Source: Piromyces finnis finn
Lineage: Eukaryota > Fungi > Neocallimastigomycota
Assembly: GCA_002104945.1 (NCBI GenBank)
Contig: MCFH01000005.1
Span: 1,302,001-1,366,000 of the forward strand
Direction of reading: 5' to 3'
Length of the DNA stretch: 64,000 nucleotides
Shown here: in pieces, positions 22,670-44,427 of the stretch
Layout of the letters: every line of letters starts with the position of its first letter
Position numbering within the stretch: position 1 is the stretch's first letter
Notes under the pieces: generated by a model
Seen by the model: only the letters and a program-made list of their open reading frames with translations
What the model was told of the DNA's origin: nothing
Database searches by the model: none
Made by a program: the position numbers and the translations under genes

Positions 22670-25600
22670 ATGAATATTAAGTTTTTACTAAAGAACCTTG
22701 GATTAGGGTTGTTAATAGCTTCTGTTCAAAGGGCAGATGCATTAAATTGTAAAGAAATAGAAAGCACTCTTTCAGGATTTGAAATAGAAGAATGTGTTGA
22801 AAATGAAAACAATGAAATTATTAAATTGTAAGAAGAAATAAAAATTAACAAAATAAATAGGTAAAAGTATGAATAAATGAAGAAAAATTCTTATTTTATA
22901 ATATTTAATAAATGACAGTAAAACAGCAGGTCTTCTTACTGAAGAAGTAATTAATAATATAAGTACATTGGATAAACTTGAAGATTTGTAAGCTTTACTT
23001 TAAATAATTTATTTATTTTATATATAAATATTATATAATAATAATAATAATAATAATTATTAATAAAATAATAATATCAATATTTTATATATTAATAAAA
23101 ATATATTATAAAAAAATATATTATAAAAATTAAAAAAAAAAAAATACATAATAAAAAACAATTTTATATTCAAATAGAAATATATATCATGACAGTTACC
23201 AAGATAACTTTGATTTAACACCTTTCGAAAGTCTTGAAAATCTTAAATCATTGTAAAAGTTTTATTTAATAGAAATAATGAAATATTTTATTATTTAATT
23301 ATTAAAATTTGTTAACATACTTTTATTTTATATTTCCATTATATATAATATATAATATAATATAGTTCAATAGATTGTTATAGAAACCCTAAGCATAGAT
23401 ATCATGGAAGTGAAATTAAAGAAAATTCATTTAAAATGAAAAACTTGGAGAAATTGTAATACTTTATTTAATACTTTATTTTTATTAAAGTTCAATATTA
23501 AATATTATTATTAATATATTTTATTTTTATATATATGTTTTTTTAAATTAACCAGATATTTATATGGATGTGATGTTATGGGAGAAGATCCTTTATCTAA
23601 CTTAACTAATCTTAAAGAATTGTAAATATATAAATAATTATTATTTTTGTATTTACAATAAATGAAATAATCTATTTTTTTTAAAGAATTATTTATTTAA
23701 AATTATTTTTAAAGAGTTGTATTAAATGATTATATTACTAAAATTAATAAATACTAATTTTTAATTTTATTTTTTTGTTTATAATCATAATTAAAACTGT
23801 ATAGAACAATTGAAATACAGAGAGGACAAGAATTACTTAACTTATCCCATATTAATAATTTAAAAAATCTCACCTCATTGTAAATTTAAATTGTTATTAT
23901 AAATATTATTATATTATTTTAAAGATGTTAGAAATTGTTTTATATAATTATTAATTTATTTTAAAAAATATATATAAATATAGATATCTCGATAATTATT
24001 ATTCTTCAACAAGAAGATATATAGTAACTGACTTTAAAGGATTAAATAATTTAAAGATATTGTACGTATACTATTATTTAATAATCAATAATAATAAAAA
24101 TAATTTAAAAATATTTAATATTATGATTAAACTCAATACTTTAAATTATGTTTTATAAAAAAATAATAGATCAATTGGTCCATATTATGTAAATAAAGAC
24201 GATATTGAAGAAATCTCTACTTTAGAAAGTCTTGAAGAATTGTAATTATTAAATATAAAAATATTAAAAATTAAATTTATACACCATATTAATATGAAAT
24301 ATTATCAATTATAATAAATAAATAAATAAATATAAATATATATATATATAAAGATATTTAATAAACTGTAGATTTGATGAAGGAACTGATTTGAATTTGC
24401 TTAAAAATCTTAAAAATACTTTAAAAATCTTGTAATTATTATTTTAAATAATATATACTAATTAAGATATATAATTTATATTGAATATATATATATTTAT
24501 TTTTTATATTTAAATATAAAAACTAAATATTAATATTATAATATTTAATATTATAATTAAAATATAGAAATTTAAGTAGTAATAAATTGGTTGAAATTCC
24601 AGAAACAATAAAAGAATTAAAGAACTTAAAAATTTTGTATGATTTTATTATTATTTAGTATTTAGTATTTAGTTACCTTATTATTTTTAAAAAAAACAAT
24701 CAAGTATTCACTATATTTTTTTTTTTATAATTAATATAATATAATAATATAGGAATTTATCACATAATGATATTAAAGAATTTCCAGAATCTTTAAACGA
24801 ATTAACAAATCTTGAAGATATGTATGTATTTAAAAAATCCAATAATTTTAATTATTCTTTATGCTTATTAATTTAATTCTTATTTTTAAATATTTATAAA
24901 AGCAATATTTCTTATAATGAAAATCTTGTTGGAAAAACTTTAACCAACGATAATATTAAAAATTGCGAATATTCTAATACTAAATTATGTATAGCTGAAG
25001 AAACCAGTTGTATAAAATCTACTTCTAATGATTTAAGTATATGCGAACCAGAACCAGAACCAGAACCAGAACCACAAAATGGATGCGAAGAAATTGATTT
25101 ATTTTTAAAAAAGAACAATATTGAAATGGAAACATCTTGTTATGCAATCAATAAAGAAGTTGCAGCAATGTAATTTTATAATATAAAAAATATTAAAATT
25201 AACATTAATATTATTAATAATAATTTATAAATTTAAATAATTTATATTTAATTAGATCTATTAATGAACAAATTGTTACTGAAGAAGCTCTTGATAAGAT
25301 ATTATCATATGATACTATAGAAGAATTGTAAATATATATTATTTATTAACAATATAATATCGTTATTATAATTAGCTTTGTAATAATTCATTAATATAAA
25401 TTTTATAATTTAAAAAAAAAAAAATCTATTAGAATTGTTGATATTGATGGATCTAAAAAGGCCATTGAAAAAATTGGTGAAAGATTATCAAATCTTGAAT
25501 ATTTGTAATTATTATATATATAAATATATACATTTAAATATGAATTTACTAGAAAAATATTTAAATAATATACTAACAAGTAAATGCATAAAACATTTTA

Positions 25601-41500: not shown

Positions 41501-44427
41501 GATACATGAGTAATGAAAATAATTTAACAGAAATATCAGGATGTATAAAGAAATTAAATAATTTAGAAATAATGTATGTTTATATGTAACATTATTTAAA
41601 TTTTTTATTTACTTGTGTAATTATTGATATATTATATATTTAATTAATCATATATAAAAAATGAATATCAATTATATTATAGATTTTGTAATTTTAGTTT
41701 TATTAAATTTAATAATTATTTTTTTTAATATATTAATGTAGAGATTTAAGTGAAAATGAAATTACTAAGATACCAGAAGCCATTAAAGAATTAGATAATT
41801 TGGAATATTTGTATTTATATATTTTTTTATTATTATTAAAAAATAATTATTAATAAGTATAAGCGAAATTTTAATGTCTTTATGAGATATTAAAATATAT
41901 ATATATTTATTATTATGAAAAAAAGAATTGGAAATAATAGAAATTTTATTATTACTTTTTTCATATATAAAATATTAATACTATAATTAATCATTTTCTT
42001 ATTTTTTATAGAGATTTATCGCATAATAAATTAACTGAAATTCCAGAAGCTGTGAAAGAATTAAAGAGCTTAATATCACTGTACAAAATATATATATACT
42101 ATATAATTATAAGAATTATTAAATATTTATAAATATTTATAATTTATAAAATATATAGAGATTTATCATACAATGATATTAAGGAGTTTCCAGAGTTTTT
42201 AAACGAATTAACAAATCTTGAAACAATGTATATATTATACCAATATGAATATTATTAGTGTGTTTTCTTGTTTTTCTAATATATATATCATTACTATTAT
42301 TATTTCTTTTTATAATTTATTTACTCTAAAAGTGATATAAGTGATAATGAAAACATTGTTGGAAAAACTTTAATCAATAGCAATATTCAATACTGCTATT
42401 ATTTGAATACAAAATTATGTATAGCAGAAGAAGAAAGTTGCGGTTACGATAGTGGCTTACCTTATTGTAAACCTAAAAATGATTGTGAAGAAATTCAATC
42501 CTTTTTATTAGAAAATGATTTTAGTTCATCATTCATTACATGCGATCTTACAGATAATAAAGCTACTTCAATGTAATAATTATATATATTAATTTAATAT
42601 ATAAATATTATGAAAACTTTAATAATATAATATATAAAAATATTACAAATATACTTATATAGAGCTATTAACGAAATTGTAACTGAAGAAGTAATTGATA
42701 AAATTTTATCTTATGACACTATAGAACATTTGTAAATATAATAAAAATATTACATTATTATTTTATCAAAAACTTGCATAATTAATTATTATTTACTAAA
42801 AAATATTTAAGATATGTTGAAATTGATGGTTCTATAAATGTAATCAAAAAGATTAGCCAAAAATTACCAAATCTTGTTGAATTGTAGATATATATAAATA
42901 TTTATTTATAGTAAATCATTTTAAATGATTTAATTAATAAGACAAACTATATTAAAAATGAACTCTTTTTTTATATCATAAATTTTAGAACTATTATTAA
43001 TAATAATGAATCATTAGATTTAAGCTCATTAAAAACTCTTGAAAATCTTACTCAATTGTAAAAAAAATATATATATATATATTATTATATTATTATTATT
43101 TATACATAAAGTATCCTCTAAATACTAAACATTTTTTAATTAAATAATTTAATTTCTTTATTTAGACGAATTAATTCCTATGAATCATTAATTAGTATTT
43201 CTAAAAATTCATTAAAATATTTAACGAACTTGGAATATTTGTAATAAACTAATGATGATGTTATATATGATTTTTTTTTTTCATTATAAATAAATTTATT
43301 TAAATAATTAAATTTTATATTATATTTTTTAATAAATAATACAGGGAATTATCTAGTTCAAAGATTTATCAAAAGAATTTAGATGAAATTGGTAAATTAA
43401 CCAAACTTAAATCATTGTAAGTTTAAATCATGAAATAATAATAAATTTTATATAGTTATTATTATAACAAATAATTTAAAATATTTTATTAATTTTTTTT
43501 TTGTATTATTATTATCTTGATCATCATTATAATGATAAATTTATAATAATCAATCAATAGAATATTTGATAATTGTCATTATCCATCAAGCTTAGATTAT
43601 AGTCCTCTCAAGAAGCTTCAAAGTCTTGAAGTTTTGTAAATATATAAAAGAAAAAAATTTTTTGATATATTTATGGAATTATAATTTAAATATATAGATA
43701 TACTAAATATAATATGGATATATTTTTTAAAATAGGATTTTCCATGATTATTATAGAAACAAAACTCCACTTTATGAAATCCCAAGTTCAATTTATAAAT
43801 TAACTAACTTGAAGGAATTGTAAGTATATTCCTATAATATCTTTAATATGAATTCTTTTTGGTATATTTAAATATAGAAAATAATATTTTATGTTTATTA
43901 ATATACATTAAACAAACCTTAAAATAGAACCATTGAATATCAAAAAATTAGTAGTATTTCATCCAACATTTCAAAGCTTGAAAAACTTAATTATTTGTAA
44001 GCAATTAATATATTACTATACATATTAATTTATAAAATATAATTTAATATCTATCTGTTAATCAAAAAATTATTAAATTATATTTATTGATTTAACTACA
44101 TTTAAAGGAATTTAAGTGGAAATAAAATTACATCTATTCCAAAGGCTCTTAACAATATGAAAAATCTTAGATATGTGTAAGTATAAAATATATATAATAT
44201 ATATTTTATCTTATTTGATCGTTTGATGATTGATTACTAAAATTTATTATTATTCTATTTAATAAACACAATAAAGTGAATTTTTGGAAAATCCAAAGTT
44301 ATCCGGTAAAACTTTAACAAATGAAAATCTTACTACCTGTTATTACGATACTTCTTCATCTATTTGTAAGGCTAAAGAAATGAAATGTTTCGGCGAAGAA
44401 GGAAATCCTAAACTCTGTAAAAAATAA
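38542..44427 (+). CDS. Secreted leucine-rich-repeat protein, copy 4 (31 exons, ~857 aa; 9 more LRR exons than copies 1/2; one exon 1 nt short)
   Basis: Manual exons: 38542-38708, 38821-38889, 39189-39263, 39371-39463, 39538-39603, 39756-39830, 39926-39997, 40094-40165, 40239-40316, 40410-40484, 40570-40638, 40732-40799 (68 nt), 40886-40951, 41038-41103, 41193-41261, 41346-41414, 41502-41573, 41742-41810, 42012-42080, 42159-42227, 42333-42572, 42663-42731, 42812-42883, 42989-43057, 43166-43240, 43345-43416, 43561-43635, 43736-43819, 43928-43996, 44108-44176, 44277-44427. All are phase 2 and GT-AG. Confidence 0.83.
38919..39161 (+). repeat. Long (AAT)n microsatellite (~80 units, one interruption) in intron 2 of LRR copy 4; a second (AAT)~20 at ~39607-39668 in intron 5
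   Basis: Read directly from the sequence. Confidence 0.95.

What the first reader, a model, noticed from the sequence alone, without database searches (positions are those of the whole stretch)
22670..44427. Tandem array of secreted LRR genes built from one-repeat-per-exon symmetric cassettes: candidate diversifying recognition system
Seen in sequence: four paralogs in which each LRR is a separate 66-93 nt exon. Every intron interrupts the same codon position (phase 2, ...L|xLxL..), so any internal exon can be skipped, duplicated or swapped without a frameshift. There are 19 such cassettes in copies 1/2 and 28 in copy 4. The proteins have a signal peptide and Cys caps but no TM, kinase or NB domain, so they would be soluble extracellular binders. 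The array shows exon gain, mosaicism, a pseudogene and variable repeat faces (separate findings). Established knowledge: exon-per-repeat LRR shuffling underlies variable receptors in other eukaryotes (e.g. brown-algal ROCO LRRs; lamprey VLRs use LRR cassettes). Inference: this may be an undescribed variable recognition or inhibitor repertoire of gut fungi directed at rumen microbes, phage or plant proteins.
Basis: partly seen in the sequence, partly recalled or inferred. Interest (0 to 1): 0.85.

Follow-up and report, generated by a model that had tools for sequence, protein, structure and literature searches.

The report
Gut-fungus secreted LRR genes, one repeat per exon
Three neighbouring genes and one dead copy in the anaerobic gut fungus Piromyces finnis do encode secreted leucine-rich-repeat proteins with one repeat per small exon, but the evidence fits ordinary gene-family evolution, not a system that mixes exons to make variable receptors.

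Summary
The window is Piromyces finnis scaffold MCFH01000005.1. It holds three intact paralogs (22670-27327, 29216-34208, 38542-44427) and a 5' pseudogene (about 35515-36970). Every intron is phase 2 and splits the same Leu codon. Internal exons are 66-93 nt, with 19 single-repeat cassettes in copies 1 and 2 and 28 in copy 4. My models for copies 1 and 2 equal the deposited proteins ORX57946.1 and ORX57947.1 exactly. The proteins have a signal peptide and two Cys-capped LRR domains, and no TM, kinase or NB domain.

The interpretation as a diversifying repertoire is not supported:
- The same exon layout occurs in relatives from Anaeromyces and Neocallimastix, so it is inherited.
- Cassette order is colinear between copies.
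- No spare or inverted cassettes lie in introns.
- dN/dS is 0.30 overall and 0.68 on concave-face positions.
- Thirteen clusters of near-identical transcript-derived relatives show no internal cassette gain or loss.
- Domain 2 keeps a near-constant length in eight relatives.

What is real is ordinary evolution: a 2840-bp gene-conversion tract, one old cassette duplication, a likely block loss of about nine cassettes in copies 1 and 2, and one pseudogene. The scan found this exon layout before on other DNA of this genome.

The parts
22670..27327 (+). Copy 1: 22 exons, 665 aa (equals ORX57946.1). Signal peptide, N-cap, 11 LRR cassettes, then a 267-nt exon (C-cap, EP linker, N-cap 2), 9 more cassettes and a final C-cap exon.
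   Evidence: Pfam LRR_14, LRR_8 and LRR_4 on the near-identical copy-2 protein; AlphaFold2 model of that protein, mean pLDDT 87.9, with regularly spaced short strands on both sides of a low-confidence stretch at residues ~330-360
29216..34208 (+). Copy 2: 22 exons, 665 aa (equals ORX57947.1).
32670..32741 (+). Copy 2 exon 17: an intact 72-nt cassette with a GTTAGT donor. A GTA-only donor filter misses it.
   Evidence: GTTAGT donors are also used in Anaeromyces relatives
22643..25482 (+). Gene-conversion tract, copy 1 side: 2840 bp with no substitutions and two low-complexity indels against copy 2, introns included. It ends inside exon 14.
   Evidence: flanks are about 70% identical upstream, and aligned introns downstream show 26% mismatch
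29189..32029 (+). Gene-conversion tract, copy 2 side.
35515..36970 (+). Copy 3: a 5' pseudogene fragment. Exon 1 is frameshifted, donor sites are lost, and remnants of roughly exons 1-9 remain. It is closer to copies 1 and 2 than to copy 4.
   Evidence: cassette HMM hits at 35878-36782
38542..44427 (+). Copy 4: 31 exons counting the 68-nt cassette. The deposited protein P0031 has 857 aa; the model has 834 aa if that cassette is left out. Domain 1 has 19 cassettes and domain 2 has 9.
40732..40799 (+). A 68-nt cassette, one base short. The assembly has five A at 40738-40742, while the deposited protein needs six. This is either a homopolymer error in the assembly or a dead cassette that must be skipped.
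40886..41103 (+). Tandemly duplicated cassette pair (exons 40886-40951 and 41038-41103). The exons are 86% identical and the start of the following intron is also similar.
24903..25169 (+). Inter-domain exon of copy 1: C-cap of domain 1 with 4 Cys, an (EP)5 linker, and the N-cap of domain 2. Copy 2 has the same exon at 31452-31718 and copy 4 at 42333-42572.
   Evidence: a profile of this exon finds only 18 proteins among 1.84 billion representatives

Best explanation
This is a small tandem family of real, intact genes of Piromyces finnis: three genes and one pseudogene. They encode secreted, soluble proteins with two Cys-capped LRR solenoids, most likely extracellular protein- or ligand-binding modules that act at or near the fungal surface.

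The one-repeat-per-exon, phase-2 layout is inherited. It came from the way the family grew, by tandem duplication of exon-plus-intron units, and it is shared by relatives in other gut-fungus genera.

The layout makes whole-repeat gains and losses frame-neutral over evolutionary time. Here that shows as one old cassette duplication in copy 4 and a likely one-block loss of about nine canonical cassettes on the branch to copies 1 and 2. Recombination between the neighbouring copies recently overwrote 2.84 kb by gene conversion.

The genes are most likely spliced constitutively into one full-length product each.

Shown: the anatomy, the identity to deposited models, the conserved layout, colinearity, purifying selection, the conversion tract and the pseudogene. 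Inferred: secretion, ligand binding, constitutive splicing of these three genes, and the direction of the cassette-number change.
For: - Gene models are exact matches to deposited proteins.
- Only LRR Pfam families are found, and there is no TM segment.
- The AlphaFold2 model is confident (mean pLDDT 87.9), with regularly spaced short strands on both sides of a low-confidence stretch that holds the EP linker, and it matches LRR ectodomains and SHOC2.
- The same phase-2 one-LRR-per-exon layout occurs in A. robustus P0042 (32 exons) and P0067 (24 exons) and in N. californiae P0043.
- Cassettes of copy 4 and copy 1 are colinear.
- No cryptic or inverted cassettes exist outside the annotated exons, the pseudogene and the 68-nt cassette.
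- dN/dS is 0.30 where aligned introns show 26% mismatch. It is 0.68 on face positions and 0.21 elsewhere.
- The spacing between the two C-caps is 298-312 aa in eight relatives, while domain 1 varies from 310 to 531 aa.
- In a tree of domain 2, copy 4 groups with copies 1 and 2, and the outgroups have a long domain 1.
- Relatives are full-length, uninterrupted ORFs on contigs barely longer than the ORF, as spliced mRNA would be. One exact 878-aa product was recovered from at least 8 independent assemblies.
- None of 13 clusters shows internal cassette indels.
Against: - Rare skipped isoforms or between-copy chimeras cannot be excluded, and assemblers collapse minor isoforms.
- Replacements between copies 1 and 2 are enriched on concave-face positions: 10 of 40 against 14 of 159, odds ratio 3.5, p = 0.011. 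This is what a binding surface under changing demands would also show.
- If the 68-nt cassette is real, copy 4 would need exon skipping to make a protein.
- The ligand, the location and even secretion are inferred from sequence only.
Confidence: 0.72

Rival explanations
1. Diversifying recognition repertoire. The symmetric cassettes are skipped, duplicated or exchanged, by alternative splicing or by frequent recombination, to produce many binding specificities against rumen microbes, phage or plant proteins.
For: - All internal exons are symmetric phase 2-2, so skipping keeps the frame.
- Cassette number differs between paralogs, 19 against 28.
- There is a recent gene-conversion tract.
- Face positions change more than other positions.
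- Exon-per-LRR shuffling and alternative splicing are described for brown-algal ROCO genes (PMC3341825, PMC11378527), and an LRR-exon-skipped SERK isoform is described in Medicago (PMC3061892).
Against: - Only three genes of this subfamily exist in P. finnis.
- Cassette order is colinear.
- No spare or inverted cassettes were found.
- Omega is below 1 even on face positions.
- Domain 2 keeps a near-constant length in eight relatives.
- No internal cassette indels occur among about 60 transcript-derived relatives.
- The layout is shared by conserved family members in other genera.
Confidence: 0.07
2. Cell-wall-associated LRR proteins. Although these three lack a chitin anchor, they act together with, or like, their CBM18-bearing relatives at the chitin wall, in a role analogous to plant LRR-extensins. 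The role could be wall organisation, adhesion or contact with partners such as methanogens.
For: - Many relatives retrieved with the same cap or with the whole protein carry 2-5 C-terminal Chitin_bind_1 (CBM18) modules: P0007, P0012, P0014, P0037, P0040, P0043, P0060.
- CBM18 transcripts rise in fungus-methanogen co-culture, and the authors suggest a role in physical association or wall remodelling (PMC8665504).
Against: - The three proteins here have no CBM18, dockerin, GPI-type tail or TM segment.
- The co-culture data concern other proteins in another species.
- This is a refinement of where the best explanation acts, not an exclusive rival.
Confidence: 0.2
3. PGIP-like inhibitors. These would be soluble LRR proteins that bind and block foreign hydrolases, for example bacterial or protozoal chitinases or proteases, in the rumen.
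For: The architecture is soluble, secreted, Cys-capped and LRR-only. Face positions are less constrained than the rest.
Against: - No specific similarity to PGIP was found. The best PDB and family matches are generic 23-residue LRRs such as LRRD1, Leptospira LIC proteins and SHOC2, all below family cut-offs.
- No plant LRRNT_2 cap was detected.
- There are no functional data.
Confidence: 0.08
4. Annotation artefact or unexpressed relics. On this reading the open frames are not functional genes.
For: One neighbouring copy is a pseudogene, and copy 4 carries a frame-breaking cassette in the assembly.
Against: - Twenty-two to thirty consecutive exons stay open with intact GT-AG sites while introns have diverged by 26% and dN/dS is 0.30.
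- Independent deposited models are identical to mine.
- Relatives (33-47% identical) occur as full-length intron-less ORFs on JGI and Logan contigs.
Confidence: 0.03

Closest known systems
Brown-algal (Ectocarpus) ROCO and LRR-kinase genes with one LRR per exon (Zambounis et al. 2012, PMC3341825; Teng et al. 2024, PMC11378527)
   Same: Each LRR is a separate small symmetric exon, and cassette number differs between recent duplicates. The exon register here (exon starts xLxxNxL and ends LxxL) matches their 'type II' LRR exon as written in PMC3341825.
   Different: These proteins have no ROC-COR GTPase or kinase, and they are secreted, not cytoplasmic. There are no non-coding or inverted LRR exons in introns, no rearranged order between duplicates, and omega is below 1. 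In Ectocarpus the type II exons themselves showed no sign of shuffling.
Plant LRR receptor kinases with one LRR per exon (SERK, PMC3061892; ERECTA from my own recall, not tested here)
   Same: Extracellular LRR ectodomains whose repeats sit on separate small exons. Skipping of one LRR exon has been seen in a Medicago SERK.
   Different: There is no TM segment, no kinase and no plant LRRNT_2 cap. The repeats here are mostly 22-25 residues with irregular members, and the caps are lineage-specific.
Lamprey variable lymphocyte receptors (from my own recall)
   Same: LRR-only binding proteins with Cys caps, built from cassettes.
   Different: VLR genes are incomplete in the germline and are assembled somatically from flanking cassettes that are not exons. 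Here the genes are complete with ordinary GT-AG introns, and no cassettes lie outside them.
Gut-fungal 'L domain-like' LRR proteins, including LRR-CBM18 members (GenBank names only; no paper found)
   Same: Same family. It shares the signal peptide, the C-x14-C N-cap, the 'GKTLTN...C...C...C' C-cap and the phase-2 one-LRR-per-exon gene layout. Members occur in Piromyces, Anaeromyces and Neocallimastix and on JGI and Logan contigs that the ORF fills almost entirely.
   Different: The three genes here lack the C-terminal chitin-binding modules that many relatives carry. Copies 1 and 2 have an unusually short first domain.
23-residue 'Ras-group' LRR proteins (SHOC2, LRRD1, Leptospira LIC LRR proteins)
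   Same: These are the best sequence matches in the PDB for the canonical cassettes.
   Different: The similarity is generic repeat similarity only. Those proteins are cytoplasmic or bacterial and lack these Cys caps, and all NCBIfam matches fall far below their cut-offs.

Membership tests
Leucine-rich repeat superfamily | Repeats of LxxLxLxxN/CxL that match LRR profile models and fold as a solenoid | tested here: met
   LRR_14, LRR_4 and LRR_8 score above their Pfam cut-offs. The AlphaFold2 model has mean pLDDT 87.9 and matches LRR ectodomains.
Gut-fungal two-domain Cys-capped secreted LRR family ('L domain-like') | Signal peptide, N-cap C-x14-C, C-cap GKTLTN...C...C...C(...C), and a second N-cap plus LRR domain plus C-cap | tested here: met
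   Alignments, and cap positions. A cap-exon profile finds 18 proteins among 1.84 billion; the named hit is from Piromyces finnis, and most of the rest have no name or taxon on record.
Gut-fungal LRR-CBM18 (chitin-anchored) subgroup | C-terminal Chitin_bind_1 (CBM18) modules | tested here: not met
   No PF00187 hit in P0001 and none among the precomputed Pfam families of P0031, and no CBM18 motif in P0019, P0001 or P0031. The module is present in relatives P0007, P0012, P0014 and P0043.
Brown-algal ROCO-type exon-shuffling LRR loci | One LRR per symmetric exon | tested here: met
Brown-algal ROCO-type exon-shuffling LRR loci | ROC-COR GTPase domain | tested here: not met
   Pfam finds LRR families only.
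Brown-algal ROCO-type exon-shuffling LRR loci | Non-coding, inactivated or inverted LRR exons inside introns, and rearranged cassette order between recent duplicates | tested here: not met
   A cassette HMM searched against the six-frame window finds nothing better than E about 0.4 outside annotated exons, the pseudogene and the 68-nt cassette. Cassette order is colinear.
Brown-algal ROCO-type exon-shuffling LRR loci | Diversifying selection on LRR residues | tested here: not met
   Omega is 0.30 overall and 0.68 on face positions between copies 1 and 2, from a small sample and a pairwise method only.
Lamprey VLR-type somatic assembly | Incomplete germline gene flanked by banks of donor LRR cassettes | tested here: not met
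   The genes are complete and intact, and no cassettes lie between or beside them in the 64-kb window.
Plant LRR receptor kinases and receptor-like proteins | Transmembrane helix, with or without a kinase, and the LRRNT_2 cap | tested here: not met
   There is no hydrophobic segment after the signal peptide, and no Pkinase or PF08263 hit.
Plant LRR receptor kinases and receptor-like proteins | Intron at the same codon position of the repeat (claimed by earlier notes of this scan for ERECTA) | not tested
Splice-diversified receptor (functional class) | Several cassette-skipped isoforms per gene in RNA | not testable with these tools
An indirect check on transcript-derived relatives found none.

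The most novel reading that the evidence does not exclude
The symmetric cassette layout is used in the living fungus. Regulated skipping of single LRR exons, possibly obligatory for the 68-nt cassette of copy 4, would give each gene several secreted binders with different concave surfaces. That would be a small splice-based recognition repertoire in an early-diverging fungus.
Probability: 0.06. Interest if true: 0.8.

Novelty: new member of a known kind. Interest (0 to 1): 0.3.

Why it matters
Secreted LRR-only proteins are rare in fungi, and nobody has studied this gut-fungus family. I found no paper on it, although LRR domains are among the most numerous in these genomes (PMC6004548).

The locus is a clean textbook case of how a repeat-per-exon layout lets a binding domain change length in frame. 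It shows a block loss of about nine repeats, a cassette duplication, a gene-conversion tract and a pseudogene within 22 kb.

If the proteins bind partners at the fungal surface, they could bear on how gut fungi attach to plant fibre or to methanogens. As a claim of a new diversity-generating immune-like system, the evidence does not carry it.

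Tried and rejected
- **RNA reads.** There is therefore no direct splice-junction or isoform evidence for these genes.
- **RNA families.** An Rfam scan of the whole window found nothing, and ARAGORN found no tRNA.
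- **Isoform hunt by proxy.** I aligned all members of 13 clusters at 90% identity of transcript-derived relatives. Every length difference was an end truncation.
- **Cryptic cassettes.** A cassette HMM against all six frames of the window gave only noise outside known exons, the pseudogene and the 68-nt cassette.
- **Positive selection.** Nei-Gojobori estimates gave omega below 1 in all partitions. No site-model test was possible, because no codeml is available and too few close coding sequences exist.
- **Polarising copy 1 against copy 2 differences with copy 4.** 11 changes are derived in copy 1, 5 in copy 2 and 10 could not be polarised. By my own rough estimate this is no clear asymmetry.
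- **Naming the family.** NCBIfam hits (Xop effectors, internalin, a Leptospira protein) are all far below their cut-offs and reflect generic LRR similarity. The protein atlas gave only generic LRR clusters. Foldseek gave generic LRR solenoids.
- **Literature.** There are no papers naming these accessions or 'L domain-like' together with anaerobic fungi.
- **The deposited 857-aa protein.** No combination of GT-AG sites reproduces it at the 68-nt cassette. It needs one more A than the assembly has.
- **Whole spliced proteins in search tools.** I did not paste spliced proteins. Copies 1, 2 and 4 were reached through their database ids instead. The 834-aa cassette-less version of copy 4 was used only inside scripts.

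Full report
**Origin of the window.** GC content is 12-32% throughout. The sequence from 35542 onward is identical to GenBank MCFH01000005.1 of Piromyces finnis, assembly GCA_002104945.1.

**Checking the observation.** Reading 22400-28400 by eye shows short GC-richer blocks. Each ends in ...TT followed by GTAA and each is preceded by (T/A/C)AG.
- A script listing AG-bounded, stop-free exons that start one base before a codon and end two bases into one recovered the whole series.
- With a 66-93 nt length limit and a GTA donor it finds 69 such exons on the + strand of 22670-44427. It finds 7 on the - strand and a mean of 5 (maximum 11) in shuffles.

**Gene models.** Chaining the exons gives three open genes.
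- Copy 1, 22670-27327: 22 exons, 665 aa.
- Copy 2, 29216-34208: 22 exons, 665 aa. Its exon 17 (32670-32741) has a GTTAGT donor, which Anaeromyces relatives also use.
- Copy 4, 38542-44427: 30 clean exons.
- Every intron is phase 2, inside the codon of the Leu at LRR position 4, and 73-299 nt long.
- Internal exons are 66-93 nt, except one inter-domain exon of 267 or 240 nt.
- Exon GC is about 24-25% and intron GC about 9%.

**Agreement with the deposited annotation.** My models for copies 1 and 2 are identical to ORX57946.1 and ORX57947.1, which are named 'hypothetical protein' and 'L domain-like protein'. The deposited copy 4 protein (P0031, 857 aa) equals my model plus one more cassette.

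**The 68-nt cassette.** That extra cassette lies at 40732-40799 and is 68 nt long in the assembly. The deposited protein reads Y-I-K-N-P-E-F there. This needs six A where the assembly has five, at 40738-40742, and no GT-AG combination reproduces it. There are two possibilities:
- The assembly has a one-base error in this A run. I consider this the more likely of the two, from my own recollection that this assembly is PacBio-based; it is not shown.
- The cassette is dead and has to be skipped.

RNA reads would decide between them.

**Copy 3.** Copy 3 (about 35515-36970) has a frameshifted first exon, lost donor sites and remnants of roughly exons 1-9. Nothing follows it.

**What the proteins are.**
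- Pfam finds only LRR families (LRR_14, LRR_4, LRR_8) and no kinase, NB-ARC, dockerin or chitin-binding domain.
- The only hydrophobic stretch is at the N-terminus, and the C-terminus is hydrophilic.
- The 16-17 Cys cluster in four caps.
- The layout is: signal peptide, N-cap (C-x14-C), LRR domain 1, C-cap ('GKTLTN' followed by four Cys), an (EP)5 or short linker, a second N-cap, LRR domain 2 with nine cassettes, and a second C-cap.
- An AlphaFold2 model of the copy 2 protein has mean pLDDT 87.9. It shows regularly spaced short strands on both sides of a low-confidence stretch at about residues 330-360, which holds the (EP)5 linker.
- The model matches LRR ectodomains, internalin and SHOC2 only generically.
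- The canonical 23-residue cassettes are closest in sequence to LRRD1, Leptospira LIC proteins and SHOC2. NCBIfam matches are far below their cut-offs.

**The family.** A profile of the inter-domain cap exon finds only 18 proteins among 1.84 billion representatives. A whole-protein search finds 'L domain-like' proteins of Piromyces, Anaeromyces and Neocallimastix. It also finds many full-length ORFs on JGI and Logan contigs that are barely longer than the ORF, as spliced mRNA would be. Many relatives add two to five C-terminal CBM18 chitin-binding modules. The three genes here do not. Only these three P. finnis proteins appear among the close hits.

**Is the exon layout special to this array?** No. 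I mapped three relatives onto their genomic loci.
- A. robustus P0042: 32 exons, all junctions phase 2.
- A. robustus P0067: 24 exons, all junctions phase 2.
- N. californiae P0043: 26 of 27 junctions phase 2, with one unresolved junction inside the CBM18 tail.

All have one repeat per 60-123 nt exon. The layout is therefore inherited by the whole family. Earlier follow-ups of this scan reported the same layout at several other loci of this genome. In the literature it is known from brown-algal ROCO and LRR-kinase genes (PMC3341825, PMC11378527) and from plant SERK genes (PMC3061892). The exon register here matches the 'type II' LRR exon of PMC3341825, the type that showed no shuffling in Ectocarpus.

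**Tests of the diversifying reading.**
1. Order. Each copy 4 cassette outside the expanded block has its best match at the corresponding position of copy 1 (E2-E9 with E2-E9, E20 with E11, E22-E30 with E13-E21), so nothing has been swapped.
2. Spare parts. A cassette HMM against all six frames of the 64-kb window finds no cassette in any intron, between genes or on the opposite strand. The exceptions are the pseudogene remnants and the 68-nt cassette.
3. Selection. In the diverged half of copies 1 and 2, dS is 0.18, dN is 0.053 and omega is 0.30, while aligned introns show 26% mismatch. Replacements are enriched on the five concave-face x positions: 10 of 40 against 14 of 159, odds ratio 3.5, p = 0.011. 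Omega there is 0.68 against 0.21 elsewhere. That indicates weaker constraint, not positive selection.
4. Isoforms by proxy. In 13 clusters of relatives at 90% or more identity, with about 60 long sequences from independent transcript-type assemblies, every length difference is an end truncation and none is an internal cassette. One exact 878-aa product was recovered from at least 8 assemblies.
5. Repeat number. The spacing between the two C-caps is 298-312 aa in eight relatives, so domain 2 keeps a near-constant length. Only domain 1 varies, from 310 to 531 aa.

**What did happen at this locus.**
- Copies 1 and 2 share a 2840-bp tract (22643-25482 and 29189-32029) with no substitutions and two low-complexity indels, introns included. 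It ends abruptly inside exon 14. The flanks are about 70% identical, and aligned introns downstream show 26% mismatch. This is a recent gene conversion.
- Copy 4 has one tandem cassette pair (40886-40951 and 41038-41103) that is 86% identical, with part of the intron also similar.
- A maximum-likelihood tree of domain 2 groups copy 4 with copies 1 and 2 (support 92/94). The outgroups have long first domains of 426-533 aa.
- By parsimony the 19-cassette first domain of copy 4 is therefore ancestral. Copies 1 and 2 lost about nine canonical cassettes, probably in one in-frame deletion. This reverses the 'exon gain' direction given in the finding. It is an inference from a small, midpoint-drawn tree.

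**Function.** Nothing here identifies a ligand. I commit to secreted, extracellular binding proteins acting at or near the fungal surface. The chitin anchors of relatives and the reported rise of CBM18 transcripts in methanogen co-culture (PMC8665504) make a wall or partner-contact role the leading guess. A PGIP-like inhibitor role is possible but has no specific support.

**Limits.**
Constitutive splicing of these three genes is inferred, not shown.
- Pairwise dN/dS on 191 codons is weak.
- No other P. finnis isolate was available.
- The plant (ERECTA) comparison from earlier notes was not tested here.

**Verdict.** This is a new member of a known kind, of modest interest.

Noticed in passing
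window 28040-28270: A GC-richer island of about 230 nt between copies 1 and 2. It has no long open frame, is unique in the window, and has no counterpart after copy 2. There is no Rfam or tRNA hit. It is unexplained and might be a small RNA gene or a relic of a mobile element.
   Followed up: partly
window 40738-40742: The deposited protein of copy 4 (857 aa) cannot be translated from the deposited genome. It needs one more A in this homopolymer. This is either an assembly error or a model built from transcript sequence.
   Followed up: partly
window about 45520-47427 and beyond, minus strand: The next gene downstream is a GH9 cellulase with a CBM10 dockerin (798 aa product), according to the called genes of locus L001.
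   Followed up: no
L003 6001-13616 and 16129-19616: In Neocallimastix californiae two LRR-CBM18 genes of the same family lie in tandem. The model of the first (P0043) starts without a signal peptide and is probably truncated at its 5' end.
   Followed up: no
L004 2890-4659: Upstream of the Anaeromyces robustus relative P0067 lies a short 134-aa called gene with a faint LRR_14 hit. It may be a fragment or pseudogene of the same family.
   Followed up: no
window 22670-44427, all donor sites: In 56 of 71 introns of the three gene models the donor reads TT|GTAA or TT|GTAG, so a retained intron would put a stop codon directly after the split Leu codon. This is probably a by-product of the GTAA donor preference in this AT-rich genome.
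   Followed up: partly
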